IMG/VR virus record: IMGVR_UViG_3300023174_000033
Location: 372,001-436,000 of that record
Reading direction: 5' to 3' (one strand)
Length of the DNA stretch: 64,000 bases
The first letter of the stretch is position 1. Every line of letters begins with the position of its first letter. Under the pieces are notes generated by a model. The model was given only the letters and a program-made list of their open reading frames with translations, had not been told where the DNA came from and made no database searches. Made by a program: the position numbers and the translations under genes. Shown here piece by piece: positions 3,001 through 63,917 of the stretch.

Positions 3001-4484
3001 GCATAGGTAGAACTTATAGTGTTATGTGGACATCTTTACCAGGTGGTCCTCAAGGGATTAGTGGCCCACAAGGATTAATTGGTGAAACTGGTTTCCAAGG
3101 TGATACTGGACCTCAAGGTGAAATTGGTTTCCAAGGTTTATCTGGCCCACAAGGAGTACAAGGTGTTTCCGGTCCTCAAGGTGTACAAGGAGCAGTTCTT
3201 CCACTTTCACAGGCATTCTCTATCTGGAATTTCAATAGTGCTACATTAAGTACTGTAAATGAATTCAGTACTAATGATGCTACTCTTCAAAATGTTACAA
3301 GTTTTGGAATTTCCTACTATGATATTTACAATGTTGATCACACTGATTGGTTTGCTCAAATACAGAATTTTGTTCAAAATAAACAAATAACCTATCTATA
3401 TGTTATTGAAGAAGGAAATACTCCAACTAGAGGTCTATATAAAGTTGATCAAGTAGAAGATAATGGTGGATTGGGATATGATTTGAGCGTTTCTCCTGTA
3501 ATATTTGGAGGAACCTTTACTAACGGTATAACTTATTCAATTACTTGGGTTGCTAATGGTTCAATGGGTGAAACTGGTTCACAAGGTGTAACTGGTCCAC
3601 AAGGTGATTTTGGCCCACAAGGTCAGATGGGGTTACAAGGTGTAACTGGTCCACAAGGAACTGGTCCACAAGGTGATATGGGTCCACAAGGTGATATGGG
3701 ACCACAAGGTTTCCAAGGAGAAACTGGTCCACAAGGTTTCCAAGGTGACCAAGGACCTCAAGGTGATATGGGTCCACAAGGTGATCAGGGTCTACAAGGT
3801 GTTTCTGGTCCACAGGGTGACCAAGGTTTGGAAGGACCACAAGGTGATATGGGTCCACAAGGTGATCAGGGTCTACAAGGTGTTTCTGGTCCACAGGGTG
3901 ACCAAGGTTTGGAAGGACCACAAGGTGATATGGGCCCACAAGGCGATCAGGGTCTACAAGGTTATTCTGGTCCACAGGGTGACCAAGGTTTGGAAGGACC
4001 ACAAGGTGATATGGGCCCACAAGGCGATCAGGGTCTACAAGGTTATTCTGGGCCACAGGGAGACCAAGGGTTAGAGGGACCACAAGGTGATATGGGCCCA
4101 CAAGGCGACCAAGGTTTACAAGGTGTGTCAGGACCACAAGGCGACCAAGGTTTAGAAGGACCACAAGGTGATATGGGACCTCAAGGTAACGAAGGGCTAC
4201 AGGGTGTGTCAGGACCACAAGGTGACCAAGGTTTAGAAGGACCTCAAGGTGATATGGGACCTCAAGGTGATATCGGACTACAAGGAGTTTCCGGACCACA
4301 AGGCGACCAAGGTTTAGAAGGACCACAAGGTGATATGGGTCCACAAGGCGATCAGGGTCTACAAGGAGTTTCCGGACCACAAGGCGACCAAGGTTTAGAA
4401 GGACCTCAAGGTGATATGGGCCCACAAGGTGATATCGGATTACAAGGAGTTTCCGGACCACAAGGCGACCAAGGTTTAGAATGA
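3..4484 (+). CDS. Collagen-like (Gly-X-Y) virion fibre protein, N-terminal part; 5' end lies outside the window
   Basis: Frame is open from base 3. Long GPQG-rich tracts alternate with repeated globular modules. Ends at TGA 4482-4484 in the middle of a repeat unit. Confidence 0.85.
1840..2340 (+). repeat. Coding tandem repeat, ~81-bp unit ([27 protein letters not shown]), ~6 copies
   Basis: Counted in the translation. Confidence 0.85.
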
Positions 4485-4500
4485 CCACAAGGCGATATGG
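3760..4500 (+). repeat. Coding tandem repeat, ~81-bp unit, ~9 copies
   Basis: Same unit as 1840-2340, counted in the translation. Confidence 0.85.
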
Positions 4501-6074
4501 GACCACAAGGCGATATTGGTTATCAAGGTGTTTCTGGCCCACAGGGATATCAAGGTGAGACTGGCCCACAGGGTGAAACCGGTCCACAAGGTGATATAGG
4601 TTTCCAAGGTGAAAGTGGTCCTCAAGGATATAGTGGTGTGCAAGGTGAAACTGGTCCACAGGGTAGAACTGGTCCACAAGGAATTGGTGGTCCAAAAGGT
4701 AATACCGGAGCTTCTGGTGTGGTTGCAACAGTAACACAAACACCAGTACAGTGGAGATATGAAGGTTTATTCGGAGGTGGCGGGCCGTTCTCGGGTCAAT
4801 TTGAAACTACACCATCTCCTAATTTCTCTAACATTACAGGATTTAGATTTAATGTAAACGACGTTAATAATATCAATTATACAACTTGGTTTAATCAACT
4901 AGAACTATTTGTTAAGAATCAAAACACATCTTATATACAATTGTATGATACAGCTTCTGTAAGTAATGTTGGATTATACCTCGTTACTGGAGCTGCTACA
5001 AGTTCTGGTTTGACTCAAGCTTTCGGTATAAGTGTATCAAGTGTGGCTATAGTTTCAAACGGATCGTTTACAATTGGTAGAACTTATAGCGTAACTTGGA
5101 TTGCATCTGGTCCACAAGGAACTCAAGGAATTCAAGGTATAACCGGCCCACAAGGTGAGACTGGCCCACAGGGTGAAACTGGTCCACAAGGTGAAATTGG
5201 CTTACAAGGTTTCTCTGGACCACAAGGTGAAATTGGCTTACAAGGTAATCTAGGACCACAGGGTGTGCAGGGTGCAGTAGTTCCTTTATCACAAGCAGCT
5301 ACTAGATGGAATTATGTAAGTGGTGGTGTATTGACTCAACAAAATAAATTTATCGCTGATTATGATGATTTATCCCTATTGAGTTGTTTTGAGATAAATT
5401 ACTACGATTCATACAATGTTGAATTTACTAATTGGTTTGTACAACTAGAGAATTTTGTAAGTAATCTACAAACCACTTATCTGTTTGTATCAAATGATGA
5501 TGATCTTACCGTTAGAGGATTTTATAGAATTACTAGTGTATCAAATTCTGGATATGGTTATACTATGAGTGTTATACCATTAGCATTTGGTGGTTCATTT
5601 GTAGATGGTGGAACTTACTCAATTAGTTGGACAGTTGAAGGAACTAAAGGTGAAACTGGTCCACAAGGTGCGTATGGTGGTCCACAGGGTCCACAGGGTC
5701 CTTATCCACTTCCTAACGTGATACAAACATTCTCTAGTGTTCTAACTTATAGTGTAACCCATAATAGCGGAGTTTATCCTTTTGTACAATTGATTGATAA
5801 TATCGGAGAGGTTTTTGTACCAGAAGCGATACTACACACTTCTACGTATTCATTTGACATAACATTCGCTACTGAATCATCTGGTTCTGTGGTTTTAGGT
5901 GGAGCAGTTGGTCCACAAGGTTCAAACGGTGGAGTTCTTGTAGGAACAGTTAGTCCAGCAAATTCTGGTTCAACTGGAACTAAAGGAGAAATTAGAGTTA
6001 ATAATGGTGGTTATATGTATATCCATACAGGTACACAATGGTTGAGATCTTCCACAACTTTCTCTACTTTCTAA
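4497..6074 (+). CDS. In-frame continuation (C-terminal part) of the collagen-like fibre protein
   Basis: Same frame as 45..4484, resuming directly after TGA with CCA CAA GGC GAT ATG. Carries third copies of the globular modules. Confidence 0.8.
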   Translation: MGPQGDIGYQGVSGPQGYQGETGPQGETGPQGDIGFQGESGPQGYSGVQGETGPQGRTGPQGIGGPKGNTGASGVVATVTQTPVQWRYEGLFGGGGPFSGQFETTPSPNFSNITGFRFNVNDVNNINYTTWFNQLELFVKNQNTSYIQLYDTASVSNVGLYLVTGAATSSGLTQAFGISVSSVAIVSNGSFTIGRTYSVTWIASGPQGTQGIQGITGPQGETGPQGETGPQGEIGLQGFSGPQGEIGLQGNLGPQGVQGAVVPLSQAATRWNYVSGGVLTQQNKFIADYDDLSLLSCFEINYYDSYNVEFTNWFVQLENFVSNLQTTYLFVSNDDDLTVRGFYRITSVSNSGYGYTMSVIPLAFGGSFVDGGTYSISWTVEGTKGETGPQGAYGGPQGPQGPYPLPNVIQTFSSVLTYSVTHNSGVYPFVQLIDNIGEVFVPEAILHTSTYSFDITFATESSGSVVLGGAVGPQGSNGGVLVGTVSPANSGSTGTKGEIRVNNGGYMYIHTGTQWLRSSTTFSTF

Positions 6075-6133: not shown

Positions 6134-7090
6134 ATGGAACATATTTTACAAGAAAATAAGGATAGATTCGTAATGTTTCCCTTAAAATATCACGATATTT
6201 GGGAAATGTATAAGACGGCTGAACATTCATTTTGGACAGCAGAAGAAATTGATTTAGCATCAGATTTAGTCGATTGGGATGAAAAGTTAAATAAGGACGA
6301 AAAACATTTTATAAAAATGGTTTTAGCTTTTTTTGCAGCATCCGATGGAATAGTAAATGAAAATCTTGCAGAAAACTTCCTTAAAGAAGTACAATATCCA
6401 GAAGCTAAATCTTTTTATGGATTTCAAATTGCTATGGAAAATGTACATTCTGAAACATATTCTCTTTTAATTGATACTTATATCAAAGATGAAAAGGAGA
6501 AAGGTATGTTGTTCCATGCTATTGATAACTTCCCTTCTATTAAAGAAAAAGCTGATTGGGCATTAAAATGGATTTCTTCCGAATCATTTGCTGAAAGACT
6601 CATTGCATTTGCAGCAGTTGAGGGTATCTTTTTTTCAGGATCCTTTTGTTCTATATTTTGGTTGAAGAAAAGGGGATTAATGCCTGGACTTTCATTTTCA
6701 AATGAATTAATTTCTCGCGACGAAGGATTACATTGTAAATTTGCTTGTTTAATTTATAACAAATACATAAAGAACAAACTTTCAGAAGAAAGAATCAAAG
6801 AAATCATTTGTTCAGCGGTTGATATAGAAAAAGTTTTTATTACAGAATCACTTCCAGTATCACTAATTGGGATGAATTCGGAATTAATGAAACAATATAT
6901 TGAATTTGTTGCTGATTTTTGGTTAAATGAATTAGGATGTTCAAAAGTTTACAATACACAGAATCCTTTTGATTTTATGGATATGATTTCAATTCAGGGC
7001 AAAACCAATTTCTTTGAGAAAAGGGTAGGTGAATATAAAAAGGCTTCTGATAGAACGATTGACTTTGATAATATTGACGTTGATTTTTAA
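6134..7090 (+). CDS. nrdB: Ribonucleotide reductase class Ia beta (R2) subunit
   Basis: [40 protein letters not shown] and RDEGLH di-iron/tyrosyl motifs. Confidence 0.97.
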
Positions 7091-52322: not shown

Positions 52323-52541
52323 ATGATTGGATTTGTTAGTTACCCAACACCAAATAAAACCTATAAACATTACAAGGGAGGTTTGTATAAAGTTCTTTTT
52401 TTATCCAAACATACCGAAACGGATGAAATATTAGTAAATTACCAATCAATTCTTTTTGGTTCTTATTATTCAAGACCACTAGAATCTTGGAATTCTACAA
52501 CAGAAAGAGGTGAACCACGTTTTAAAGAAGTTATACAATGA
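52323..52541 (+). CDS. DUF1653-family protein
   Basis: YKHYKGGLYKV...HTETDEILVNYQS...YSRPLESW. Confidence 0.8.
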   Translation: MIGFVSYPTPNKTYKHYKGGLYKVLFLSKHTETDEILVNYQSILFGSYYSRPLESWNSTTERGEPRFKEVIQ

Positions 52542-52972
52542 TTAAGGAAAAAGAATTTATCCTGAATAAAATAAAAATTGAAGGTGATGCAAAAGAATGG
52601 AACTATACTTGTAAAAATGGTATAGAATTCAAATGTTATATTCGTAGAGTTCCAAGAAGCGGACACCTTTGTGGTTATGTGCACCTAACACCTGATAACG
52701 ATTACTTTGGTTATGAATATGATCATATACCAGTAGATTGCCATGGTGGATTGACCTATAGTTCTGACCATGATGGTGAGTGGGTTATTGGATTTGATTG
52801 TGCTCACTTTGGTGATAATAAACCATTTTATTCCGATATGGAAATCTATGGGAATGATGGTACTTATAGAGATATGGAATATCTTACTAAAGAATGTGAA
52901 TCTATTTGTGAACAATTATCAACTAAAAGTAAATCACATTATAGAACAAAAAAATTAAATGAAATATTATGA
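52538..52972 (+). CDS. Conserved phage protein (HGGLTY..GFDCxH) with C-tag (RTKKLNEIL)
   Basis: GHLCGYV, CHGGLTYS, IGFDCAHFGD. Confidence 0.75.
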   Translation: MIKEKEFILNKIKIEGDAKEWNYTCKNGIEFKCYIRRVPRSGHLCGYVHLTPDNDYFGYEYDHIPVDCHGGLTYSSDHDGEWVIGFDCAHFGDNKPFYSDMEIYGNDGTYRDMEYLTKECESICEQLSTKSKSHYRTKKLNEIL

Positions 52973-55192: not shown

Positions 55193-55266
55193 AGACAGGT
55201 GGCGCAATCGGTGAGCGCAGGACTCTTATACGGTCAAGGTTGTGGGTTCAAGTCCCATCCTGTCAA
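55193..55266 (+). tRNA. tRNA-Ile (anticodon UAU)
   Basis: Manual fold: acceptor GACAGG/CCTGTC (1:72 mismatch), D stem GCGC/GCGC, anticodon loop CT-TAT-AC, T arm GTGGG-TTCAAGT-CCCAT; CCA not encoded. Confidence 0.8.
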
Positions 55267-55323
55267 CAAATAAAATCTGTAAACAAAGAGGGCTAATAAT
55301 ATAAAATATTAAGATATATAAAA

Positions 55324-55397
55324 GGGCTCTTAACTCAGTAGGTCAGAGTGTCGGTCTCATAAACCGGAAGTCGTTGGTTCAAACCCAACAGGGCCCA
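55324..55397 (+). tRNA. tRNA with CAU anticodon (elongator Met or lysidine Ile2; not initiator)
   Basis: GGGCTCT/AGGGCCC acceptor, ACTC/GAGT D stem, loop CT-CAT-AA, GTTGG-TTCAAAC-CCAAC T arm. Confidence 0.88.
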
Positions 55398-55430
55398 CAC
55401 TTTTTTATTAAAAAAAACTAATTAACTAAC

Positions 55431-55673
55431 TTGTTCAAGAGTTCAGACTATTTCAACGTCGTATGTATCGAAAATTGTAAATCTACCAAAGAATTCTGGC
55501 CAATAACAATTGGTAAGCATTATCAAATCAAAAGTGGTTGGAAAACTTCAAATATTGCCTTCTATAACATAATAGCTGATGATGGAAAAGAATGGATAAT
55601 ACCATCTACTTTTTTCAAATATGTAGATGAAGTAAGAGAGATAAAGATAGAGGAAATCCTTACTGTAAATTAA
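55431..55673 (+). CDS. Small CI..GKxY family protein with C-tag
   Basis: VVCIE..ITIGKHYQI..FKYVDEVREIKIEEIL. Confidence 0.7.
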   Translation: MFKSSDYFNVVCIENCKSTKEFWPITIGKHYQIKSGWKTSNIAFYNIIADDGKEWIIPSTFFKYVDEVREIKIEEILTVN

Positions 55674-56401
55674 CCAGCTTTCCTCCTGCCAAGTGAATCT
55701 ATACTCCCATCATGCTTGAACTCACTAACCATTCCAGAAAGATAAATAGTTCCAAAATGGTAATCATCTTTCGGGTCAAATAAATAGTAATCATAACCCG
55801 TGAATATCTTATTATAGTCACTCATAAGTGTTCTCCACTCATTAGTTCTTCTTCCCACCGCCCATATATTCTTCGAATTTTTATAGTCATTGATGGGTAC
55901 ACTTAACAAATCATAATTATTTCCCTGTTTATATGGACTTGACTGTAACCAATCCTCAAATCCATCCCAACCATCAACTAACCACCAGTCTTTGACAAAA
56001 TAAATATCTTTGGTTCCTTTCAAAGTAAGGTGACTTGCATCTACTGGTAGTTCAGTTTGAATTAAAAAATAATCATCTTGGTATTTAGCTAGACTCATAT
56101 CTTTCCTAAATCCATTTGGAATTTCAACTTTCCAATTTACTTGATTGATTTTTCCTGAAGTACCAGTTGCTGGATAGAGTGATCGACTAACAAGTTGTAG
56201 ACCAGTTAGTTCTGGTTTTAAATATTTAGTAAATAACTTTTCAATTTGTAATAAATCACTTGAATTTAGTTCTTCTGTGCCCGGACTCTTTTCCATATCG
56301 AAGAAAAGGTCATTGAAAAGGTCTTGACCTAAATTTACATAGGTTGAACTTTTCAAATACTTTTCGTGTCTTGACTCATTGAATTTCCTTAAATATCTCA
56401 T
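55670..56401 (-). CDS. N-tag family protein (two-domain)
   Basis: MRYLRKFNES; QDDYFLI; TAATATATA at 56410. Confidence 0.75.
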   Translation of the reverse strand: MRYLRKFNESRHEKYLKSSTYVNLGQDLFNDLFFDMEKSPGTEELNSSDLLQIEKLFTKYLKPELTGLQLVSRSLYPATGTSGKINQVNWKVEIPNGFRKDMSLAKYQDDYFLIQTELPVDASHLTLKGTKDIYFVKDWWLVDGWDGFEDWLQSSPYKQGNNYDLLSVPINDYKNSKNIWAVGRRTNEWRTLMSDYNKIFTGYDYYLFDPKDDYHFGTIYLSGMVSEFKHDGSIDSLGRRKAG

Positions 56402-56419
56402 AGATAGTGTATATATTAA

Positions 56420-56641
56420 CTATCCGAGCAATATATTCAATTTATCATTTCTATGTTCATTTAAACGCTTGAACATTTTTATAGGATAGTGTCCCATTCT
56501 ATCATAGTCATTTACAACCCAACACAAATCAATATCATTAGTCAAAGTTAGATCGTATACTTTACCTATTACGAATGGACCTTCAATTATGGAATCCTCC
56601 CAATAGGTATTGTCTATACAGACTGCTTTTATTTTTTCCAT
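56420..56641 (-). CDS. Small CI..GKxY family protein with C-tag
   Basis: AVCID..IGKVYDL..FKRLNEHRNDKLNILL. Confidence 0.75.
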   Translation of the reverse strand: MEKIKAVCIDNTYWEDSIIEGPFVIGKVYDLTLTNDIDLCWVVNDYDRMGHYPIKMFKRLNEHRNDKLNILLG

Positions 56642-56642
56642 A

Positions 56643-56966
56643 TTAAAGAGTTTTAATCCATTCTATAAGTAGTAATGATACTTTATATCCACAGAATGCT
56701 CCAAGTGCGGATGGAATTGGAAATACAATTAATTTACCTAAATCAGTAACATATTTAGGTCTATTAACAATTTTCCCCATAAAAAAGTAATAAGCTAAAT
56801 AACCAAGTAAAACAGCAATATCTGTTTTAGTAGCTATAAAAACCACAAGAGTTGCACCAATAAAACCAAAAGTAAAGTTATCTCTTACACCCTCCCATAC
56901 TTCATATGGTGTTGCTTCATTAATTTCTTTAATTATCTTCTTATGTAGTTCTTTAGTCTTTCTCAT
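56643..56966 (-). CDS. Membrane protein
   Basis: Three hydrophobic helices; ATG overlaps the MTase stop. Confidence 0.7.
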   Translation of the reverse strand: MRKTKELHKKIIKEINEATPYEVWEGVRDNFTFGFIGATLVVFIATKTDIAVLLGYLAYYFFMGKIVNRPKYVTDLGKLIVFPIPSALGAFCGYKVSLLLIEWIKTL

Positions 56967-57712
56967 TTTTGTTTTTTCCATTCTTCAAAGTGATCGATTT
57001 GTGGTTGTGATAATTCAGATCCTATATAACTCATTCCCCTTTCAATACAAGCTTTAGCAGTAGTTCCAATTCCCATAAAACTATCATATACAAGTGAGTT
57101 GGGTTTAGCATAAATATCCATTAACTTAGTAATAAGTTCAGTAGAAAAAGTAGCTTTGTTTAGGGGATTAGAACCATCATTATTTCTAGCTTCAATAAAG
57201 TTATAGATATTCTCATAGTTAGCTTGCCCAGTTCTTTCAATTCTACCAGTTATTTTCTTATTAGCATCAAAGGTTTTGAATTCATTTTTCCTAGAAAAGA
57301 CAAAGATATATTCAACTATTCTTGTAAGTTTATTCTTACTCACATTATTTGGAATAGCATTTGATTTTTTCCAAACGATACAATCTGCTGTAATAAAGTT
57401 AGTTCTTCTAATAATATCAGCGATAACTAACCAAATTAAATGTGTTTTCTCACTTGAATAAGACATATTGTAAAGAACACAACCATTTGGTTTTAATATT
57501 TTATCATAACCATTAAAGACATCACAAGTCCAGTCAATATATTCTTGGTCTGTTTTGAAGTCTTGGAATATGTCATACCTACTGGAATATTTATCTGCTG
57601 CGCCAACTCTGGATGTATTATATGGTGGTGATGTAATGACCATATCAACCTGTCCTTGAAGTTCAGGTCTATTCATTGTATCAAAGCAGGATTCGTTATA
57701 AATTATATTCAT
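56963..57712 (-). CDS. Orphan DNA methyltransferase, beta class (N4-C/N6-A)
   Basis: ITSPPYN motif IV precedes VYDSFMGIGTT motif I. Confidence 0.92.
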   Translation of the reverse strand: MNIIYNESCFDTMNRPELQGQVDMVITSPPYNTSRVGAADKYSSRYDIFQDFKTDQEYIDWTCDVFNGYDKILKPNGCVLYNMSYSSEKTHLIWLVIADIIRRTNFITADCIVWKKSNAIPNNVSKNKLTRIVEYIFVFSRKNEFKTFDANKKITGRIERTGQANYENIYNFIEARNNDGSNPLNKATFSTELITKLMDIYAKPNSLVYDSFMGIGTTAKACIERGMSYIGSELSQPQIDHFEEWKKQK

Positions 57713-58098
57713 TTTAGTAGTTGTTCTATTCTTTGGTTTCTTTTTTCTTGTGGTTTTAAAACTGGATTATACTTGAAGTATCTATCAAACTTTAGTAACC
57801 AATATAGTGAATAAGGGTCAAAGTAAGTGATTAAGTTTCTATTCAAATAAACATTTTTTTGTAGCTCATAATGTCCATTTCTCCATCTATAAAACTTTCC
57901 TGTTATGTATAGGTTTTCATCTTCAGTTATTGTATTTCCATCAACACTTTCCCAAAGGTAAAACTTTTTATTAGGAAGGTCGTCATATACCTTTTTATAG
58001 TATTTCCATTTATTAAAGTTAGTCATAATAGAAGCAAACACAAATGGAATGAAACTAGCAATGACTACAACAAAAATATTAAAATGTAATGTAATCAT
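57709..58098 (-). CDS. Membrane-anchored hypothetical protein with C-tag (RNQRIEQLL)
   Basis: ORF track. Confidence 0.7.
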   Translation of the reverse strand: MITLHFNIFVVVIASFIPFVFASIMTNFNKWKYYKKVYDDLPNKKFYLWESVDGNTITEDENLYITGKFYRWRNGHYELQKNVYLNRNLITYFDPYSLYWLLKFDRYFKYNPVLKPQEKRNQRIEQLLK

Positions 58099-58459: not shown

Positions 58460-58675
58460 TTAATTCTCCAAAATCTTTTGTAAAAAGTATTCTCTAATGA
58501 TTGACTTATCCCAAAAATATTTAGCTGGTATATCTACTCGTCTCCCAAGATTATCAATGGTTAAATAAAGAACACCATGTTCCATTTTTACTTCAACCAA
58601 TTCATATTCATCACCTAACTTTATATTAGCGTGATTTGCTGGTGAATAGTGTTCCTTAATACATTTGATTATCAT
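58460..58675 (-). CDS. Array gene 17: small CI family protein with C-tag
   Basis: IKCIK..LGDEYEL..REYFLQKIL. Confidence 0.7.
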   Translation of the reverse strand: MIIKCIKEHYSPANHANIKLGDEYELVEVKMEHGVLYLTIDNLGRRVDIPAKYFWDKSIIREYFLQKILEN

Positions 58676-58995
58676 AGGTTTAATATCTCATCTATATCAT
58701 CATCCCGTTTTTGTTCTTTGGATGGTAGTGCCACATCTACTAAATATACTTTGAAGTTAAGGATTTCTTCTTGGATACTACCATCTTTCATATCATAAAA
58801 CTCTTTATAAACAAACTTACCTTGGTAATCATTTGGATATTTACTATTATCTGGCACAAAATCAACAAACTCACCCCTTTGTCTTGGTACACCGCAATAA
58901 TCATCAAGATATTCTCTGATGTATTTGAGGGTTGGACCAACACAGATTGGTGTACCATCTTGTAATACCACATGGGAAAATTTTACTACTTTCAT
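58672..58995 (-). CDS. Array gene 16: unrelated body with C-tag
   Basis: ..RDDDIDEIL. Confidence 0.7.
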   Translation of the reverse strand: MKVVKFSHVVLQDGTPICVGPTLKYIREYLDDYCGVPRQRGEFVDFVPDNSKYPNDYQGKFVYKEFYDMKDGSIQEEILNFKVYLVDVALPSKEQKRDDDIDEILNL

Positions 58996-58996
58996 T

Positions 58997-59272
58997 TTAC
59001 AAAGATAATATATTTTCTATTTTTTCCTCTCTAATTTCTTCAATTGTTTTGAACTCTGAAATAGGGTAGTAGTATTTGGTTGTTCCCTTATCAGATTTTT
59101 CAATCAAATAATATCTTTTATCATCGTTTATTTTGGATGAAATATGACTACCAAACCAAACATAAGGATTTGTGTAAGGAGCCAAGGTATCTTCTCTTGG
59201 TAAGGCATTATACACTTTACCATCAGTTAATTCATCCCACTCAACATCAGTTTTGATTTTAATAACTTTCAT
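58997..59272 (-). CDS. Array gene 15: T.GKxY family with C-tag
   Basis: LTDGKVYNA..REEKIENIL. Confidence 0.72.
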   Translation of the reverse strand: MKVIKIKTDVEWDELTDGKVYNALPREDTLAPYTNPYVWFGSHISSKINDDKRYYLIEKSDKGTTKYYYPISEFKTIEEIREEKIENILSL

Positions 59273-59508
59273 TCTAATATTTTTTCTATTTGTTTTTCTC
59301 TGAATTCTATTATATCAATAAAGTATTCGTCAAATGTTATTTTACCAATAGAAAATCTATGTCTGCCAGTATTCACATCATATAGTTCAACTTTTACAGG
59401 TGGTCCAAATCCTTCATTACCATCATAGTTTAGGAAATAAGTAAAAGTATCTCCCTTTTCTACTGGTGTTTCTTTCATTGGTGATTTAATGCAAATACAT
59501 TTATTCAT
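59269..59508 (-). CDS. Array gene 14
   Basis: CICIK..KGDTF..REKQIEKIL. Confidence 0.72.
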   Translation of the reverse strand: MNKCICIKSPMKETPVEKGDTFTYFLNYDGNEGFGPPVKVELYDVNTGRHRFSIGKITFDEYFIDIIEFREKQIEKILE

Positions 59509-59735
59509 TTTAATATTTCATCTAATTGTTGTTGTCTCCATTTAGTTACTTCTACCATCTTAAACCTATCAGTATTAAGCATCCATTCACTAAATTGTTT
59601 TACTTTTAATTTATCATTTTTGGAAAAATAATTACCACTAACAAAAAGAACATTATATATTTTACCAGGTGTGAAATAGTGACACCTTGAATATTCATAT
59701 GGGTCGTTTTTAATACAGATATATTTTAGGTTCAT
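59505..59735 (-). CDS. Array gene 13
   Basis: YICIK..FTPGKIYNV..RQQQLDEIL. Confidence 0.72.
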   Translation of the reverse strand: MNLKYICIKNDPYEYSRCHYFTPGKIYNVLFVSGNYFSKNDKLKVKQFSEWMLNTDRFKMVEVTKWRQQQLDEILK

Positions 59736-59977
59736 TTTAATAGTTCATCTATTTGTTTTTCTCTGTATTCTTCTATAAAATCAAAATCTTCTATTGGCCA
59801 ATAGGAAAACTGGTCTCTATCATCTTCAACAATATAAGACATAATAACTTTATCTTTACCCGCTAAATAAATGTATTGACCTGAACCATATAAAGGTAGT
59901 GCTTCATATATTTTTCCATAAGTCAATCTTTCCCAGAAAGGTTCATTACCTGGTTTTCTTTTATACCTCAACTTCAT
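59732..59977 (-). CDS. Array gene 12
   Basis: LTYGKIYEA..REKQIDELL. Confidence 0.72.
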   Translation of the reverse strand: MKLRYKRKPGNEPFWERLTYGKIYEALPLYGSGQYIYLAGKDKVIMSYIVEDDRDQFSYWPIEDFDFIEEYREKQIDELLK

Positions 59978-60225
59978 TTTAATAGTTCATCTATTTGTTT
60001 TTGTCTAAAATCTTGTATATCCTCAAAATGACTTTTGAAATGTTTTTCTATTAGACCAAAGTCATACATACCATCTTTAACATCATAAAGATGAAAAGTT
60101 ATTTGGCGATTTCCAAGTGTATCACCAATTTTATCTACTTCATACCAGAACTTATCACCCTTTCTAACAGGTGTTCTTTTTCCTAAAAATTTCCTATCTT
60201 TTATACACACACAATAATTTCTCAT
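59974..60225 (-). CDS. Array gene 11
   Basis: CVCIK..KGDKF..RQKQIDELL. Confidence 0.72.
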   Translation of the reverse strand: MRNYCVCIKDRKFLGKRTPVRKGDKFWYEVDKIGDTLGNRQITFHLYDVKDGMYDFGLIEKHFKSHFEDIQDFRQKQIDELLK

Positions 60226-60578
60226 TCTAAAATCTTTTTTATTTTTATTTCTCTAATTGTTTCTTTACTGGCATACCTTTCTATAATAGATTTTTTTGGG
60301 TTGAAAGTCATAGGAGTAACTTGAAAACAAGATGGTTCAGATAGTAATTGGTCTATGGTTTCTTGTCTATATTCGTCAAGTGGTTTGAAATGTTCCAAAA
60401 AAATATCTGATGGAAGTCCAAGTATATAACGCAACCCACTCACATGGTGGTCTGATTTTTGATAAAGGTTCCATTGTAGTTCTTTTTTCATAGGTGGTAA
60501 AACCAAAAAAACATCACCTATTTTTGGTTTATGTTGAGTATAATACTGCCTATTTTTTATACAAATGTATTGTGTCAT
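60222..60578 (-). CDS. Array gene 10 (two C-tags)
   Basis: YICIK..RQETIDQLL..REIKIKKIL. Confidence 0.72.
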   Translation of the reverse strand: MTQYICIKNRQYYTQHKPKIGDVFLVLPPMKKELQWNLYQKSDHHVSGLRYILGLPSDIFLEHFKPLDEYRQETIDQLLSEPSCFQVTPMTFNPKKSIIERYASKETIREIKIKKILE

Positions 60579-60805
60579 TCTAAAAACTTTTCTATTTGTT
60601 CTTGTCTAAATTCATCAATCAATTTGAAATAATATTCTGGTACTACAATTGGGTGTCCTGTATCCGCAGTGACACCATATTGACTATCAAAATGAAAACT
60701 CCCATAATGTTTAACTTCATAAACCTTTCCAATAGTTAGTATTGCATTTCTACCATTTTTTTGTGGAGTATCCCAGTTTTTATTTCTTATACAAATTGCT
60801 TTCAT
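60575..60805 (-). CDS. Array gene 9
   Basis: AICIR..LTIGKVYEV..RQEQIEKFL. Confidence 0.72.
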   Translation of the reverse strand: MKAICIRNKNWDTPQKNGRNAILTIGKVYEVKHYGSFHFDSQYGVTADTGHPIVVPEYYFKLIDEFRQEQIEKFLE

Positions 60806-61005
60806 TTAAGTAACTCTTCTAATCTTATATTTCTCAATTCTGTAAGTGGTGTGAACATTTTTTCAATATAATGTTCTTTGGCTCCACCATCATCAACAAT
60901 ATAAATCCATACTACACTATTCCTATGGACTTCATAAATCTTACCTGGTGTGATATTAAATTGGATACCATTGGGTGTGATATTGGTTTTACAAACTACT
61001 TTCAT
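60802..61005 (-). CDS. Array gene 8
   Basis: VVCK..ITPGKIYEV..RNIRLEELL. Confidence 0.72.
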   Translation of the reverse strand: MKVVCKTNITPNGIQFNITPGKIYEVHRNSVVWIYIVDDGGAKEHYIEKMFTPLTELRNIRLEELLK

Positions 61006-61217
61006 TTTCCTAAAATATCATCAATGTTTTTATCCCTTTTATCAGCCTCATAGTTTTCCATAAAGTATTTTATCTGCTCTACTATATTCTTATCATTTTT
61101 TTCATTATTTTTAATCCTATCTTGTAGAGCAAAAAGTAAGGAATGTATTTGCTCCTTGAAATCTTCTTTTACAAAGAGTTTTTCCAACTTTTCTCTGAAT
61201 TCTGGGTCCAAGTTCAT
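61002..61217 (-). CDS. Array gene 7: helical unrelated body with C-tag
   Basis: ..RDKNIDDIL. Confidence 0.7.
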   Translation of the reverse strand: MNLDPEFREKLEKLFVKEDFKEQIHSLLFALQDRIKNNEKNDKNIVEQIKYFMENYEADKRDKNIDDILGK

Positions 61218-61444
61218 TTTAGTAGTTCTTCTAGTTTTTCTAATCTAACTTCATCAAGGGGTTTAAACCTACCTCTTCTTAAAGCAACCTCAATCCCATC
61301 ATTACCTATTATATAATATACACCATTATCATTAAATGTTGAATTCAGCCTATCTGTAACTTGGTAGATTTTACCAGAAGTCACAAAATCCATACCCAAT
61401 GCCTCATTAGTAACACCAGTATCATCTATACACACAACTTTCAT
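61214..61444 (-). CDS. Array gene 6
   Basis: VVCID..VTSGKIYQV..RLEKLEELL. Confidence 0.72.
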   Translation of the reverse strand: MKVVCIDDTGVTNEALGMDFVTSGKIYQVTDRLNSTFNDNGVYYIIGNDGIEVALRRGRFKPLDEVRLEKLEELLK

Positions 61445-61650
61445 TTTATTAATTGATTTATCTTATCTTGTCTTATTGATTGGAGTGGTTTAAACATATA
61501 TTCTGTATATTCACTATATTTGATTTTATATCCTTTATCATCTATGATATATTTAGCAAAGAAATAGTCATGAGGTGCTGTTATTACTTCATAGATTTTA
61601 CCTTCAGTAAAATTAAATATTTTGGTATTTATATTACAAACTATTTTCAT
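61441..61650 (-). CDS. Array gene 5
   Basis: IVCN..FTEGKIYEV..RQDKINQLI. Confidence 0.72.
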   Translation of the reverse strand: MKIVCNINTKIFNFTEGKIYEVITAPHDYFFAKYIIDDKGYKIKYSEYTEYMFKPLQSIRQDKINQLIK

Positions 61651-61874
61651 TTTAATAATTCGTCTAACTTTTCTTGTCTATATTGTTCTAACTCAATAAA
61701 TCTCCTTTTTGATAAAATCACTATTTTTCCACTATCATCATACAACTTATATGATTGTTCAGAACCATCATCAATTAACTCATATACTCTACCCAAAGTT
61801 AAAAAGATTTCTATTTTATCTGGGTTTTTACCCATCTTAGGAAAGGGATAATCATCTATACATACTACTTTCAT
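61647..61874 (-). CDS. Array gene 4
   Basis: MKVVCID at 61874..LTLGRVYEL..RQEKLDELL. Confidence 0.72.
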   Translation of the reverse strand: MKVVCIDDYPFPKMGKNPDKIEIFLTLGRVYELIDDGSEQSYKLYDDSGKIVILSKRRFIELEQYRQEKLDELLK

Positions 61875-62086
61875 AACAAAGTTTTTTCTAATTGCATTTC
61901 TCTCCATTCATCCAAAGATACAAATGATTTTGGACTTGTATAAATTGTTTCTCCAATATCATTTGTTATTTTCATAGCCAGTTTATCCTTGTTGGATTTC
62001 CAAATAGGGTTCCAAGAGTCAAGTGCTTCATATTGTTTCCCATATGTAAGATTGGGACAATTTTCTTTGATAAAAATAACTTTCAT
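61871..62086 (-). CDS. Array gene 3
   Basis: LTYGKQYEA..REMQLEKTL. Confidence 0.72.
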   Translation of the reverse strand: MKVIFIKENCPNLTYGKQYEALDSWNPIWKSNKDKLAMKITNDIGETIYTSPKSFVSLDEWREMQLEKTLL

Positions 62087-62325
62087 TTTAATAATTCGTC
62101 TAACTTTTCTAATCTAACTTCATCAAGTGGTTTGAACCTGTCCATCCTTAGTGATACTTCTTTACCATTATCACTGATAATATTTACCATATGAATACCT
62201 GATGGTTTATGTATACCACCTTTATTTGGATGGGAAATCATTTCATATACTTTTCCCTCTGTAATATGTTCATGTGGGGAAACCCCACCTTCTCTGATTT
62301 TATTGTTTATACAAACTAGTTTCAT
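62083..62325 (-). CDS. Array gene 2
   Basis: LVCIN..ITEGKVYEM..RLEKLDELL. Confidence 0.72.
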   Translation of the reverse strand: MKLVCINNKIREGGVSPHEHITEGKVYEMISHPNKGGIHKPSGIHMVNIISDNGKEVSLRMDRFKPLDEVRLEKLDELLK

Positions 62326-62648
62326 AGGATTTCTTCTATTTTTTTATTCCTAACTTCTTGGATGTTTTCACTATCAACCCATTTATTAAAATCTTCAACT
62401 GCGTTTTCTGAAGCATGTTGGTGGTAATACTCTTGATGTTTCACAAGTGATGGGTCAAGAGTTCCACCTTTCCCATCTGAATATGGAATAGGAACTGGAC
62501 TTACTTTATCTTGGATAAGACCAGGATAATGTTTTGTATATCCACAAGGTTTGCAAATAAAACGAATGCATCTATCATAAGAATCGTCTTTGATTTTTCC
62601 ACCACATTTTGGGCAAGGTTTTAAGTATTGTTCGCTATAACTTCCCAT
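62322..62648 (-). CDS. Array gene 1: zinc-ribbon protein with C-tag
   Basis: PCPKCGG..CKPCG..RNKKIEEIL; TATTTTTG at 62653-62660 upstream. Confidence 0.72.
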   Translation of the reverse strand: MGSYSEQYLKPCPKCGGKIKDDSYDRCIRFICKPCGYTKHYPGLIQDKVSPVPIPYSDGKGGTLDPSLVKHQEYYHQHASENAVEDFNKWVDSENIQEVRNKKIEEIL

Positions 62649-62671
62649 ACCACAAAAATAATATATAATCT

Positions 62672-63043
62672 ATGAAATACCTAAAAATATTTGAAAGTTT
62701 TAATCAAGGGAAATATTATTGGCCAATAACTGCAACTGAGTTCAATAAGTATGTAGAAACATTTGAATTTACAGAACAAGAAATTGAAGCAATAAAAAGT
62801 ATCTGTGATAAAAGATTTACTGAAATGGATTTTGAATTTTATACAAGCTGGGATATACCACCAACTGGTTCAATAAATTTGGAGACAAATACAGGTGGTC
62901 AAAACTTATATACTATAAGAACAAGAATAGACAAAGAAAATGACGAATATTTCGCAGTCGCATATAATATTGATAGGACACCAGAATATTACAAAGCAGA
63001 CCAATTGGAGGGTCTAATAAAACTTTTGGAAGATATCTTATGA
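62672..63043 (+). CDS. N-tag paralog family protein
   Basis: MKYLKIFESF; NDEYFAV; YYKADQLEG; TAATATATA at 62659. Confidence 0.78.
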   Translation: MKYLKIFESFNQGKYYWPITATEFNKYVETFEFTEQEIEAIKSICDKRFTEMDFEFYTSWDIPPTGSINLETNTGGQNLYTIRTRIDKENDEYFAVAYNIDRTPEYYKADQLEGLIKLLEDIL

Positions 63044-63486
63044 AATACCTAAAAATATTTGAAGAGTTTTCTGATTTCTATAAAAAAATACGAAATGACG
63101 ATATCAATCCTAAAAAAATCATTGATATTGATTTAGGTATACAGAATATGATAGAATCAAGATTAAAGCACAAATCTACTTTTTCATATTCCATATACCA
63201 ACCATACATGGGTAGTATGTTGAGAGGAAATCAAAGGAAATTAAAGATTGAAACAGATATAATCGTTACACATGGTTCTCCAGATAAAATGGTAAAACCC
63301 TTAATCAAAAAACACAATACTATGATTGTTGAGATGGAAGATGAGTGGTTTATAGTTTCTAACCAGACAAGATTTGATGGTGGTGGTTCTTGGGCTACTC
63401 CAAAGTCATTGGATATTGAATTATATGAATGTGACCAAGAAGAAGGACTTTTGGAGTTATTAAAGAAATTAGATATAATAAAATGA
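63040..63486 (+). CDS. N-tag paralog family protein
   Basis: MKYLKIFEEF; EDEWFIV; YECDQEEG. Confidence 0.78.
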   Translation: MKYLKIFEEFSDFYKKIRNDDINPKKIIDIDLGIQNMIESRLKHKSTFSYSIYQPYMGSMLRGNQRKLKIETDIIVTHGSPDKMVKPLIKKHNTMIVEMEDEWFIVSNQTRFDGGGSWATPKSLDIELYECDQEEGLLELLKKLDIIK

Positions 63487-63917
63487 AATACCTAAAAATA
63501 TTTGAAGGTAGTGAAAGTTTTTTTGGAACCTCCAACTATGGTGATTTTGAAATAAATAAACCCGCCCATAAAGTCATATTCAATATGTTCATATGTGATT
63601 ATGAATCACCAAATTGGAAAGAAAATGTTGAAATCCTAAAAGGTATAAACTTCCCAACAAGTATAGAAAAATCAAAAGGTTATCATAAAGGTTTATCTAT
63701 TCAAGTTTTACTTGATATGGACATCCAATCAGCAAAAGAGTTCTCTGATGAAATCGTCAATATGTTTTTAGATAAACCACTTATCGTTATTGCTGAGGTA
63801 GATGTAATAATGAAAAAACAACCAATAGGTTATTACTTTGATAAAGACCTATGGGAACCTGGTAGATATTTTGATAAACTAATTGAAAGTGGTGAAAAAG
63901 GAGTATTTATACATTAA
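63483..63917 (+). CDS. N-tagged protein with an unrelated body
   Basis: MKYLKIFEGS. Confidence 0.75.
   Translation: MKYLKIFEGSESFFGTSNYGDFEINKPAHKVIFNMFICDYESPNWKENVEILKGINFPTSIEKSKGYHKGLSIQVLLDMDIQSAKEFSDEIVNMFLDKPLIVIAEVDVIMKKQPIGYYFDKDLWEPGRYFDKLIESGEKGVFIH

What the first reader, a model, noticed from the sequence alone, without database searches (positions are those of the whole stretch)
58460..62648. 17-gene translationally coupled array of hypervariable mini-proteins
Seen: 67-118-aa ORFs, nearly all joined by 4-bp ATGA overlaps, behind one TAnnTTTG element. 14 of them (plus 55431 and 56420) share MK[VL][VI]CI..[LIF]T.GK.Y.[VA]..F, with unalignable loops in between; three unrelated genes are interleaved but keep the tag. 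Inference: a gene accordion of small SH3-like barrels forming a variable effector library made in near-equal amounts.
Basis: partly seen in the sequence, partly recalled or inferred. Interest (0 to 1): 0.7.

Follow-up and report, generated by a model that had tools for sequence, protein, structure and literature searches.

The report
Phage SH3-like mini-gene cassette array
A 465-kb lake phage of Bacteroidota carries a run of 17 overlapping mini-genes, 14 of them variants of one small SH3-like barrel; related phages gain, lose and swap these genes at a shared junction, which also encodes a C-terminal tag found on dozens of unrelated proteins, and what any of them does is unknown.

Summary
On the minus strand, 62648 to 58460 holds 17 ORFs of 67-118 aa. 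Fifteen of the 16 junctions are ATGA overlaps. Fourteen ORFs, plus 55431 and 56420, belong to one family. The predicted fold is an SH3-like barrel with a C-terminal helix (pLDDT 91).

The window lies in a 464,605-bp freshwater phage record with Bacteroidota-type promoters. The family has about 25 copies in this genome, 19-21 in a distant 642-kb phage, and more than 3,000 clusters in metagenomes.

Eight syntenic loci from relatives keep the flanking genes at 95-100% identity and the cassette order. They hold about 30 different cassettes in different subsets, and homology blocks end at the junctions.

The junction has three roles:
- It encodes the terminal helix motif R..K[IL]..[IL]L.
- It gives an A-rich, unstructured stretch before the next start codon.
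- It supplies short homology for recombination.

The motif is not confined to the array. It ends 26 ORFs here and 39 in the 642-kb phage, and most of those are not SH3-like.

Orthologues are mostly under purifying selection. The loops differ between paralogues but do not evolve faster than the core between orthologues.

The "effector library" function and the "equal amounts" claim remain untested.

The parts
62653..62660 (-). TAnnTTTG box (TATTTTTG) 4 nt before the ATG of gene 1. It is a Bacteroidota sigma-A -7 box placed so that transcription would start at the A of the ATG, giving a leaderless mRNA.
   Evidence: The box position of -12 to -5 is taken from PMC9723704. The same geometry occurs at 25 sites in the genome.
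62322..62648 (-). Gene 1, 108 aa. CxxC...CxxC zinc ribbon, not SH3-like, ends ...VRNKKIEEIL (tag). Absent from some relatives.
   Evidence: weak Lar_restr_allev match, E 0.016, below cut-off; joint 62325>62651
62083..62325 (-). Gene 2, SH3-like family member, 80 aa
61871..62086 (-). Gene 3, family member, 71 aa
61647..61874 (-). Gene 4, family member, 75 aa when started at the ATGA overlap
61441..61650 (-). Gene 5, family member, 69 aa. It has a 93% identical DNA copy at genome 6581-6794.
61214..61444 (-). Gene 6, family member, 76 aa. Cut out exactly in contigs of two lake metagenomes.
   Evidence: joint 61212>61440
61002..61217 (-). Gene 7, 71 aa, lacks the family's MKVVCI/GK.Y signature and fails its profile (its sequence reads as mostly helical); ends KRDKNIDDILGK (tag)
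60802..61005 (-). Gene 8, the smallest family member at 67 aa. This is the protein that was folded.
60575..60805 (-). Gene 9, family member, 76 aa
60222..60578 (-). Gene 10, family member, 118 aa. It has an in-frame 38-aa extension that carries a second tag. In relatives the same extension sits on gene-11-like proteins.
   Evidence: (P0010, P0018, P0045)
59974..60225 (-). Gene 11, family member, 83 aa (KGD.F.Y subtype)
59732..59977 (-). Gene 12, family member, 81 aa. It is flanked by identical 25-nt junctions.
59505..59735 (-). Gene 13, family member, 76 aa
59269..59508 (-). Gene 14, family member, 79 aa (KGD.F.Y subtype)
58997..59272 (-). Gene 15, family member, 91 aa. Its last codons contain a second TAnnTTTG box (59000-59007), 4 nt before the ATG of gene 16.
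58672..58995 (-). Gene 16, 107 aa, not SH3-like. A low-confidence alpha/beta model shows a terminal helix that is the tag, QKRDDDIDEILNL.
58460..58675 (-). Gene 17, family member, 71 aa, the last of the overlapping run. Present in nearly all relatives.
56420..56641 (-). Further family member, 73 aa, further down the same strand run
55431..55673 (+). Further family member, 80 aa, on the other strand
57709..58098 (-). 129-aa ORF with an N-terminal hydrophobic stretch and the same C-terminal tag (KRNQRIEQLLK). It overlaps by ATGA the N6/N4 DNA methyltransferase gene at 56963-57712.
52538..52972 (+). 144-aa ORF of phrog_2164, unrelated to SH3, ending YRTKKLNEIL. An example of the tag outside any array.

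Best explanation
This is a cassette array in the variable early region of a huge phage of Bacteroidota.

The proteins. Fourteen of the 17 genes encode stand-alone SH3-like barrels. Three parts are constant: the core, the first strand (MKVVCI) and the last helix. The two loops that bind ligands in classical SH3 domains (RT-like and n-Src-like) differ in length and sequence from one paralogue to the next.

The junction. Each cassette ends in a conserved junction of about 40-70 nt: the codons of the terminal helix (R..K[IL]..[IL]L), then ATGA, then the codons of MKVVCI. It works at three levels.
1. Protein. It gives every product a C-terminal motif that this phage lineage also places on dozens of unrelated small proteins.
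2. mRNA. It is A-rich and unstructured right before the next start codon. In a host whose ribosomes ignore Shine-Dalgarno sequences, the ribosome that terminates at TGA can then restart at the overlapping ATG. The first gene is probably read from a leaderless transcript made by host RNA polymerase.
3. DNA. It provides short homology at which cassettes are deleted, inserted and swapped, so relatives hold different subsets in the same order.

Shown and inferred. Shown: the anatomy, the fold class, the family size, the cassette turnover with breakpoints at the junctions, purifying selection, and the C-terminal position and codon bias of the motif. Inferred: leaderless transcription, coupled translation, early timing, and that the products are cytoplasmic binders with different targets (host takeover or counter-defence).
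For: Anatomy. 17 ORFs, 15 of 16 joined by ATGA.

Fold. pLDDT 91, five strands plus a helix. All top matches are SH3 domains (PDB Foldseek TM 0.5-0.6; VIA Z 5-6). Phage DUF7244/YorP-type proteins and DUF6501 (TM 0.70-0.79) also match.

Family.
- 25 copies in the genome.
- 3,137 representatives at E<=1e-3.
- C5, T19, G21, K22, Y24, D39, F51 and R58 are 92-100% conserved. Positions 9-17, 28-33 and 40-45 are free, with insertions after 11 and 30.

Turnover.
- Flanks are 95-100% identical while array content differs.
- About 30 cassette clusters occur over 8 loci in collinear order.
- 47 of 64 homology-block ends lie within -18 to +45 nt of a cassette start, against 24% expected (p 2e-16).
- Metagenome contigs join tag to tag in frame (59525>60243, 717 nt). 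They also remove exactly gene 6 (227 nt) or gene 1.

Selection. dN/dS is 0.07-0.7 for most orthologue pairs.

mRNA level.
- Junctions fold no better than shuffles.
- Ile/Leu codons in the motif end in A in 75% of cases against 44% elsewhere (p 7e-9). The 642-kb phage gives 73% against 55%.
- The bias is stronger where a gene start follows within 15 nt: 79% against 63%.

Promoter. TAnnTTTG plus 4 nt plus ATG occurs at 25 sites. The box sits at -12 to -5 in flavobacteria (PMC9723704). Bacteroidia ribosomes do not use SD (PMC6847099).

Host. The genome encodes four ORFs with T9SS Por_Secre_tail.
Against: - No function is known for any relative; all hits are hypothetical proteins.
- No match to defence or counter-defence models.
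- Between orthologues the loops do not change faster than the core (11.6% against 7.8%, p 0.09), so there is no sign of an ongoing arms race in the loops.
- Several polar residues are almost invariant (T19, K22, D39, R58). This fits a shared partner or ligand as well as it fits a mere scaffold.
- The motif also ends genes that have no coupled downstream gene and more than 30 non-SH3 ORFs in a distant phage. Recombination and reinitiation alone do not explain it.
- Transcription is not shown. The one RNA library holds matching contigs, but DNA carry-over cannot be excluded.
Confidence: 0.55

Rival explanations
1. The C-terminal motif is an address tag. It docks dozens of unrelated small proteins, the SH3-like family among them, onto one common partner. 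That partner could be the prohead (for co-injection), a protease (for timed removal) or another hub. On this view the array is a set of cargoes or adaptors, and the DNA and mRNA roles of the junction are secondary.
For: - The motif is almost only C-terminal: 26 of 30 matches lie within 3 residues of the end against 0.45 expected. In the 642-kb phage it is 39 of 57 against 1.4 expected.
- About 10 tagged ORFs here and about 33 there are not SH3-like. They include a putative membrane protein and a phrog_2164 protein.
- It is present where no downstream gene is coupled.
- In gene 16 the motif is a helix after a low-confidence linker.
- A second terminal motif, N-terminal MKYLKLFE-like, marks another 25 and 37 ORFs and never the same ones.
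- Short terminal targeting peptides on diverse cargo are known from T4 (PMC9026906).
Against: - No partner has been identified.
- In the SH3-like family the helix is modelled with pLDDT about 90 as part of the domain. It may simply be structural there.
- The codon bias shows a constraint at the nucleotide level too.
- No virion proteome exists for this uncultured phage.
Confidence: 0.25
2. The products are subunits of one hetero-oligomeric assembly or virion structure. On this view, overlapping genes serve to keep their amounts matched.
For: - Overlapping stop and start codons are common in operons for complexes (established knowledge).
- All members share the same terminal helix, which could be a common assembly element.
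Against: - Close relatives with 95-100% identical flanks lack or replace many members. That is not expected for subunits of one structure.
- The homodimer prediction gave no verdict.
- The pI values range from 4.7 to 9.3 with no pattern.
Confidence: 0.07
3. They are small nucleic-acid-binding proteins in the manner of Sso7d or chromo-like barrels (a barrel plus a C-terminal helix) that coat or mark DNA or RNA.
For: - The topology of barrel plus terminal helix, and conserved K22, Y24 and R58.
- Integrase C-terminal domains and KOW domains are among the structural matches.
Against: - The median pI of the family is 6.2 and only 30% of members are above pI 8.
- The best matches are peptide-binding SH3 domains, and no Sso7d-type chain is among the top 50.
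Confidence: 0.06
4. The ORFs are decaying or selfish filler without protein function, kept only because the repeated junctions keep duplicating them.
For: - High turnover between relatives.
- Two orthologue pairs have dN/dS above 1, at very low dS.
Against: - Most pairs have dN/dS of 0.07-0.7.
- Frames are intact in all eight loci.
- Eight positions are 92-100% conserved over 122 distant members.
- The fold is confident.
Confidence: 0.04

Closest known systems
Hyperplastic regions of T4-type phages with PeSL-mediated modular shuffling (PMC2839356, PMC4122927)
   Same: - Runs of small early ORFs of unknown function.
- Close relatives differ by insertion, deletion and replacement of single ORFs.
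- The exchange points are short conserved sequences that flank each ORF.
   Different: - In T4-type phages the repeated element is intergenic: an early promoter plus a stem-loop.
- Here there is no intergenic space. The repeat is coding (last helix, ATGA, first strand), unstructured and without a promoter at most junctions.
- Here most cassettes are also paralogues of one fold.
Integron gene-cassette arrays
   Same: - Promoterless small cassettes in one orientation behind one promoter.
- Each cassette has a conserved 3' element.
- Content varies between relatives.
   Different: - No integrase at the array; the only match is a fragment about 417 kb away.
- The 3' element forms no attC-like hairpin, and it is translated.
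Stand-alone phage SH3-clan proteins: Pfam DUF7244 and DUF6501, B. subtilis SPbeta YorP (PDB 2heq)
   Same: - Same fold class and size.
- Multi-repeat relatives of this family pass the DUF6501 cut-off.
- No member of these families has a tested function. DUF7244 was recently noted next to lysis genes in T1-like phages (PMC13164509).
   Different: - The window's own members stay below both Pfam cut-offs.
- They carry a conserved terminal helix that the DUF6501 model does not cover.
- They come as arrays of 14 or more paralogues.
- They are not next to lysis genes.
T4 internal proteins and their capsid targeting sequence (PMC9026906)
   Same: - A short terminal peptide shared by otherwise unrelated, fast-changing small proteins of a large phage.
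- A variable locus thought to serve against host defences.
   Different: - The T4 signal is N-terminal, 10 residues long and cleaved by the prohead protease, and it has been tested.
- Here the array's motif is C-terminal, and neither its partner nor any processing is known.
Poxvirus gene accordions
   Same: Copy number of a tandem family expands and contracts between close relatives.
   Different: - Accordions are recent, near-identical copies of one gene that arise under selection.
- Here the paralogues are old (17-47% identity), and the turnover is of distinct cassettes.

Membership tests
SH3-like barrel (SH3 clan) | Five-stranded small barrel with RT-, n-Src- and distal-type loops | tested here: met
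   AF2 model with pLDDT 91 and strands at 2-5, 23-28, 33-37, 43-47 and 51-53. All top PDB matches are SH3 domains, with TM 0.5-0.6 and Z 5-6. These scores are moderate: they support the fold class, not homology to eukaryotic SH3.
Pfam DUF6501 / DUF7244 | Score above the curated gathering cut-off | tested here: not met
   The best match of the window's own members is 17.0 bits against a cut-off of 23.8. Tandem-repeat relatives that match this family's profile at E 1e-25 do pass DUF6501, at 73 bits. The link is therefore indirect.
Integron cassette array | IntI-type tyrosine recombinase and attI next to the array | tested here: not met
   The only Phage_integrase matches are at genome 13.6-14.7 kb. 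The array is at 430-435 kb.
Integron cassette array | attC: an imperfect palindrome that folds as a single strand at each cassette's 3' end | tested here: not met
   Six junctions folded as single-stranded DNA gave z-scores of -0.5 to +1.2 against shuffles.
PeSL-type shuffling (T4-type phages) | Intergenic early promoter plus stem-loop between the shuffled ORFs | tested here: not met
   15 of 16 junctions are 4-nt overlaps with no intergenic DNA. No terminator-like hairpins lie on the minus strand within the array.
PeSL-type shuffling (T4-type phages) | Insertions, deletions and replacements between close relatives bounded by the repeated element | tested here: met
   47 of 64 homology-block ends fall at junctions. 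Metagenome contigs show cassette-precise joints.
Gene accordion | Recent tandem amplification, seen as near-identical neighbouring copies | tested here: not met
   Paralogues within the array are 17-47% identical. The only near-identical copy, of gene 5, lies in the second mini-array at genome 6.5 kb, far from this array in the record's coordinates.
Diversity-generating retroelement | Reverse transcriptase with a template/variable repeat pair | tested here: not met
   No RVT_1 match in the genome.
Translationally coupled operon | Stop codon of one gene overlaps the start codon of the next | tested here: met
   ATGA at 15 of 16 junctions.
Translationally coupled operon | Downstream translation depends on upstream translation | not testable with these tools
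   This needs reporter fusions or ribosome profiling in a host, and the phage is uncultured.
Terminal targeting peptide (T4 CTS type) | The short terminal peptide is sufficient to bring a protein to a defined place | not testable with these tools
   Only the positional bias of the motif is shown.

The most novel reading that the evidence does not exclude
Huge phages of Bacteroidota may use two short terminal address tags. One is C-terminal, h-R-[DEN]-x-K-[IL]-x-x-[IL]-L. The other is N-terminal, MK[YH]LK.FE. The two never occur together, and between them they mark about 8-9% of all genes. They would route dozens of unrelated small proteins to common destinations such as the prohead for co-injection, or a shared hub or protease. 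On this reading the SH3-like array is an exchangeable cargo or adaptor library for that route.
Probability: 0.2. Interest if true: 0.85.

Novelty: new variant of a known kind. Interest (0 to 1): 0.62.

Why it matters
Huge phages are known almost only from metagenomes, and most of their genes have no assigned role. This locus offers three openings.

- It defines a very large family of mini-proteins that Pfam does not describe as such. The family has a confident fold and a clear split into constant and variable parts.
- It shows a way of shuffling genes in which the recombination site, the translation restart site and the protein's last helix are one and the same sequence.
- It exposes two terminal motifs that together mark roughly one gene in eleven or twelve in two distant huge phages. 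If these are sorting signals, they would label whole functional classes of unknown genes at once. They could also be used to load proteins of choice.

Tried and rejected
- Homodimer prediction of gene 8, to test whether the terminal helix pairs: no verdict, score 0.11. This is neither for nor against.
- Scans of IMG/VR for relatives: the alignment was too diverse, and a single protein found none apart from the window's own record.
- tblastn of a typical member against 50,697 phage records: no match. DNA search of the array against the same records: one 276-nt match, to the gene-1 region, in LR756502.1.
- PHROGs: only weak hits, E about 0.003, to families of unknown function.
- PADLOC: nothing.
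- PDB by sequence: nothing credible.
- Homologues of gene 1: close relatives only, all unnamed.
- Literature searches for the motif strings found nothing relevant.
- T4-type prohead protease (PF03420): not found, but the control genomes did not ring either, so this is uninformative.
- Diversifying selection in the loops: not significant.
- Transcription: a metatranscriptome holds contigs with 0-2 mismatches to parts of the array (60579-60746, 61124-61405, 61652-61809). Contigs carry no strand, and DNA carry-over cannot be excluded.
- The idea that the motif exists only as the upstream region of the next gene: rejected. 21 of 65 tagged genes have no closely following gene.
- The idea that the tag on unrelated genes is only a by-product of recombination inside this array: weakened. 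The distant 642-kb phage has more than 30 tagged non-family ORFs spread over the whole genome.

Full report
**Where the window lies.** The window is bases 372001-436000 of a 464,605-bp virus record that is rated 98% complete. Runs holding the array come from lake and other freshwater metagenomes. GC content is about 30%. The genome carries many TAnnTTTG boxes and four ORFs with the type IX secretion C-terminal domain. Both point to a Bacteroidota host. The only match of the array among 50,697 phage records is a 276-nt stretch of gene 1 in LR756502.1, an uncultured 642-kb phage.

**The observation.** On the minus strand, 62648 to 58460 holds 17 ORFs of 67-118 aa.
- Fifteen of the 16 junctions are ATGA overlaps. 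The gene 15/16 junction is TAAAATG.
- Gene 4 fits both the family alignment and the overlap only if it starts at 61874.
- In a rough gene set of the whole genome, 55 of 353 same-strand junctions are -4 overlaps, and 15 of those are in this array.
- Fourteen ORFs, plus 55431-55673(+) and 56420-56641(-), align as one family (A1). A profile built from 122 metagenomic members finds the same 14.
- Genes 1, 7 and 16 are not members, yet they end in the same motif.

**Fold.** Gene 8 (67 aa) was folded with a 74-row alignment and gave pLDDT 91: five strands and a helix at 54-66.
- Foldseek against the PDB returns only SH3 domains at the top (TM 0.5-0.6), along with YorP of prophage SPbeta.
- An independent aligner gives Z 5-6, again SH3 domains, with a few KOW and integrase C-terminal domains.
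- Viral and Atlas libraries return phage proteins of unknown function, DUF7244 and DUF6501.
- The window's own members stay below the Pfam cut-offs. Tandem-repeat relatives pass DUF6501.
- The fold class is therefore supported. Family membership in those Pfam entries is indirect.

**Size and shape of the family.**
- The profile finds 25 copies in this genome. Among them are a second mini-array at genome 6.5-7.3 kb, copies just beyond the window's end, and the C-terminal domain of a 293-aa ORF.
- It finds 19-21 copies in the 642-kb phage.
- It finds 3,137 representatives at E<=0.001 in a 1.84-billion-protein library. Most are 62-90 aa with the same ends, and a few carry up to 13 tandem repeats. 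Atlas neighbours are all viral.
- Over 122 members, C5, T19, G21, K22, Y24, D39, F51 and R58 are 92-100% conserved.
- Positions 9-17, 28-33 and 40-45 are nearly free, and insertions fall after positions 11 and 30. These stretches correspond to the RT-type and n-Src-type loops and the distal hairpin.

**Turnover.** Eight syntenic loci were recovered from other freshwater samples.
- The genes after the array are 95-100% identical in protein, while shared cassettes range from 50 to 97% and many are present in only some loci.
- Clustering at 60% identity gives about 30 cassette types between gene 1 and gene 17. They keep a collinear order, and only a handful occur in nearly all loci.
- DNA homology blocks between the window and these loci end at the junctions. 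Of 64 block ends, 47 lie within -18 to +45 nt of a cassette start, against 24% expected (p 2e-16).
- Contigs of other runs join 60243 to 59525, tag to tag and in frame (717 nt). Others remove exactly gene 6 (227 nt, with 7-9 nt of shared letters) or gene 1.
- Gene 10 carries a 38-aa extension with a second tag. In relatives the same extension sits on gene-11-like proteins, or is absent.
- Gene 5 has a 93% identical DNA copy in the second mini-array, at genome 6.5 kb.
- The content is thus not fixed among relatives, and the junctions are the exchange points.

**Selection.** Orthologue pairs give dN/dS of 0.07-0.7 for most cassettes. Two pairs lie above 1 at very low dS. The flanking genes give 0-0.15. 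The cassettes are therefore coding and constrained, but looser than their neighbours. Between orthologues, loop positions differ in 11.6% of residues and core positions in 7.8% (p 0.09). The loop variety is old paralogue divergence, not visible ongoing diversification.

**The junction as mRNA.** Six junctions fold no better than shuffled sequence.
- Within the motif, Ile and Leu codons end in A in 75% of cases against 44% in gene bodies and 45% in the last 12 codons of untagged genes (p about 1e-8). The 642-kb phage gives 73% against 55-58%.
- The bias is stronger where a gene start follows within 15 nt: 79% against 63% (p 0.02).
- Bacteroidia ribosomes do not use Shine-Dalgarno pairing, and initiation depends on open mRNA and particular upstream bases (PMC6847099).
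- An A-rich, open stretch before each overlapping ATG therefore fits reinitiation. This step is inferred.

**Promoters.** TATTTTTG lies 4 nt before the ATG of gene 1. Across the genome, TAnnTTTG followed by exactly 4 nt and a start codon occurs 25 times, against 1-8 at any other spacing. In flavobacteria the box occupies -12 to -5 (PMC9723704). This geometry would start the transcript at the A of the ATG, giving a leaderless mRNA made by host RNA polymerase. A second box of the same geometry is written into the last codons of gene 15, before gene 16. The strand run continues past gene 17 through a tagged putative membrane protein, an N6/N4 DNA methyltransferase and another family member, as far as 55670.

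**The motif beyond the array.**
- In this genome the pattern R..[KQERD][ILVM]..[ILFT][LI] occurs 30 times in 561 ORFs. Twenty-six of those lie within 3 residues of the C-terminus, against 0.45 expected.
- About ten of the tagged ORFs are not SH3-like.
- Seven tagged genes have no closely following gene.
- In the 642-kb phage, 39 of 57 matches are C-terminal against 1.4 expected. Only about six of those are family members.
- The motif is therefore a lineage-wide C-terminal feature that is defined at the protein level, since several synonymous codons are used. A nucleotide bias is laid on top of it.
- Its role is open. In the SH3-like family it may simply be the last helix of the domain. On other proteins it looks appended, as in gene 16, where it follows a low-confidence linker.

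**What it most likely is.** This is a cassette array of SH3-like mini-proteins in a variable early region, with a junction that serves protein, mRNA and DNA at once. The products are most likely cytoplasmic binders with different targets. That last step is inference from the fold, the placement of the variable loops, the promoter type and the company of a DNA methyltransferase. No relative has a tested function.

The main rival is that the motif is an address tag for a common partner, which would make the array a cargo or adaptor set. I give this about one chance in four. Subunits of one assembly, nucleic-acid binders and functionless filler are less likely, for the reasons given under each rival.

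**Comparison with known systems.**
- The closest in behaviour are the hyperplastic regions of T4-type phages, where small ORFs are shuffled at repeated promoter-stem-loop elements (PMC2839356, PMC4122927). Here the repeated element is coding and there is no intergenic DNA.
- Integrons share the architecture, but not the integrase or the attC hairpin.
- A gene accordion in the strict sense, and a diversity-generating retroelement, are both excluded.
- T4 internal proteins share the idea of a terminal peptide on varied small proteins (PMC9026906).
- I rate the finding a new variant of a known kind. The terminal motifs are the part that could prove to be new in kind.

Noticed in passing
window 62672-63043, 63040-63486, 63483-63917 (+) and 55670-56401 (-); 25 ORFs genome-wide: An N-terminal motif MK[YH][LI][KR].F[EN] opens 25 otherwise unrelated ORFs (123-553 aa) in this genome and 37 in the 642-kb phage LR756502.1. 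It never occurs on an ORF that carries the C-terminal motif. In form it resembles the T4 capsid targeting sequence (PMC9026906). No paper mentions these strings.
   Followed up: partly
25 sites in the genome; in the window 62653-62660 and 59000-59007 (-): TAnnTTTG followed by exactly 4 nt and a start codon is strongly over-represented (25 sites, against 1-8 at any other spacing). This implies many leaderless transcripts. Leaderless mRNAs are only about 5% in a flavobacterial host (PMC9723704).
   Followed up: partly
window 3-4484 and 4497-6074 (+): Two collagen-triple-helix repeat ORFs, of at least 1,493 aa (open at the window's start) and 525 aa. They account for the GC-rich first 6 kb, at 41-44% against about 30% elsewhere. 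A ribonucleotide reductase small chain follows at 6134-7090.
   Followed up: partly
window 55193-55267 and 55324-55398 (+): tRNA-Ile (anticodon TAT) and tRNA-Met genes lie between the strand runs.
   Followed up: no
genome 6572-7292 (+), outside the window (L002, L007): A second mini-array of three family members joined by ATGA. Its first gene is a 93% identical DNA copy of array gene 5.
   Followed up: partly
genome 343113-343994 (-), outside the window: A 293-aa ORF whose last 65 residues are a family domain with the motif, behind a leaderless-type promoter. It is the only fusion of the domain to a larger protein in this genome, and the N-terminal part was not scanned against any family library.
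   Followed up: partly
P0092 (metagenomic relative, 460 aa): SH3-like repeats fused to a C-terminal Lar-like restriction-alleviation zinc ribbon (Pfam E 4.7e-8; phrog_599). Array gene 1 is a zinc ribbon with a weak Lar match, E 0.016. This is a hint of a link to restriction evasion and no more than that.
   Followed up: partly
genome 397792-398007, 440105-440293 and two weaker sites: Phage ORFs of 195-1,688 aa end in the Bacteroidota type IX secretion sorting domain, Por_Secre_tail.
   Followed up: no
window 56963-57712 (-): An N6/N4 DNA methyltransferase gene sits in the same strand run and is conserved next to the array in all relatives.
   Followed up: no
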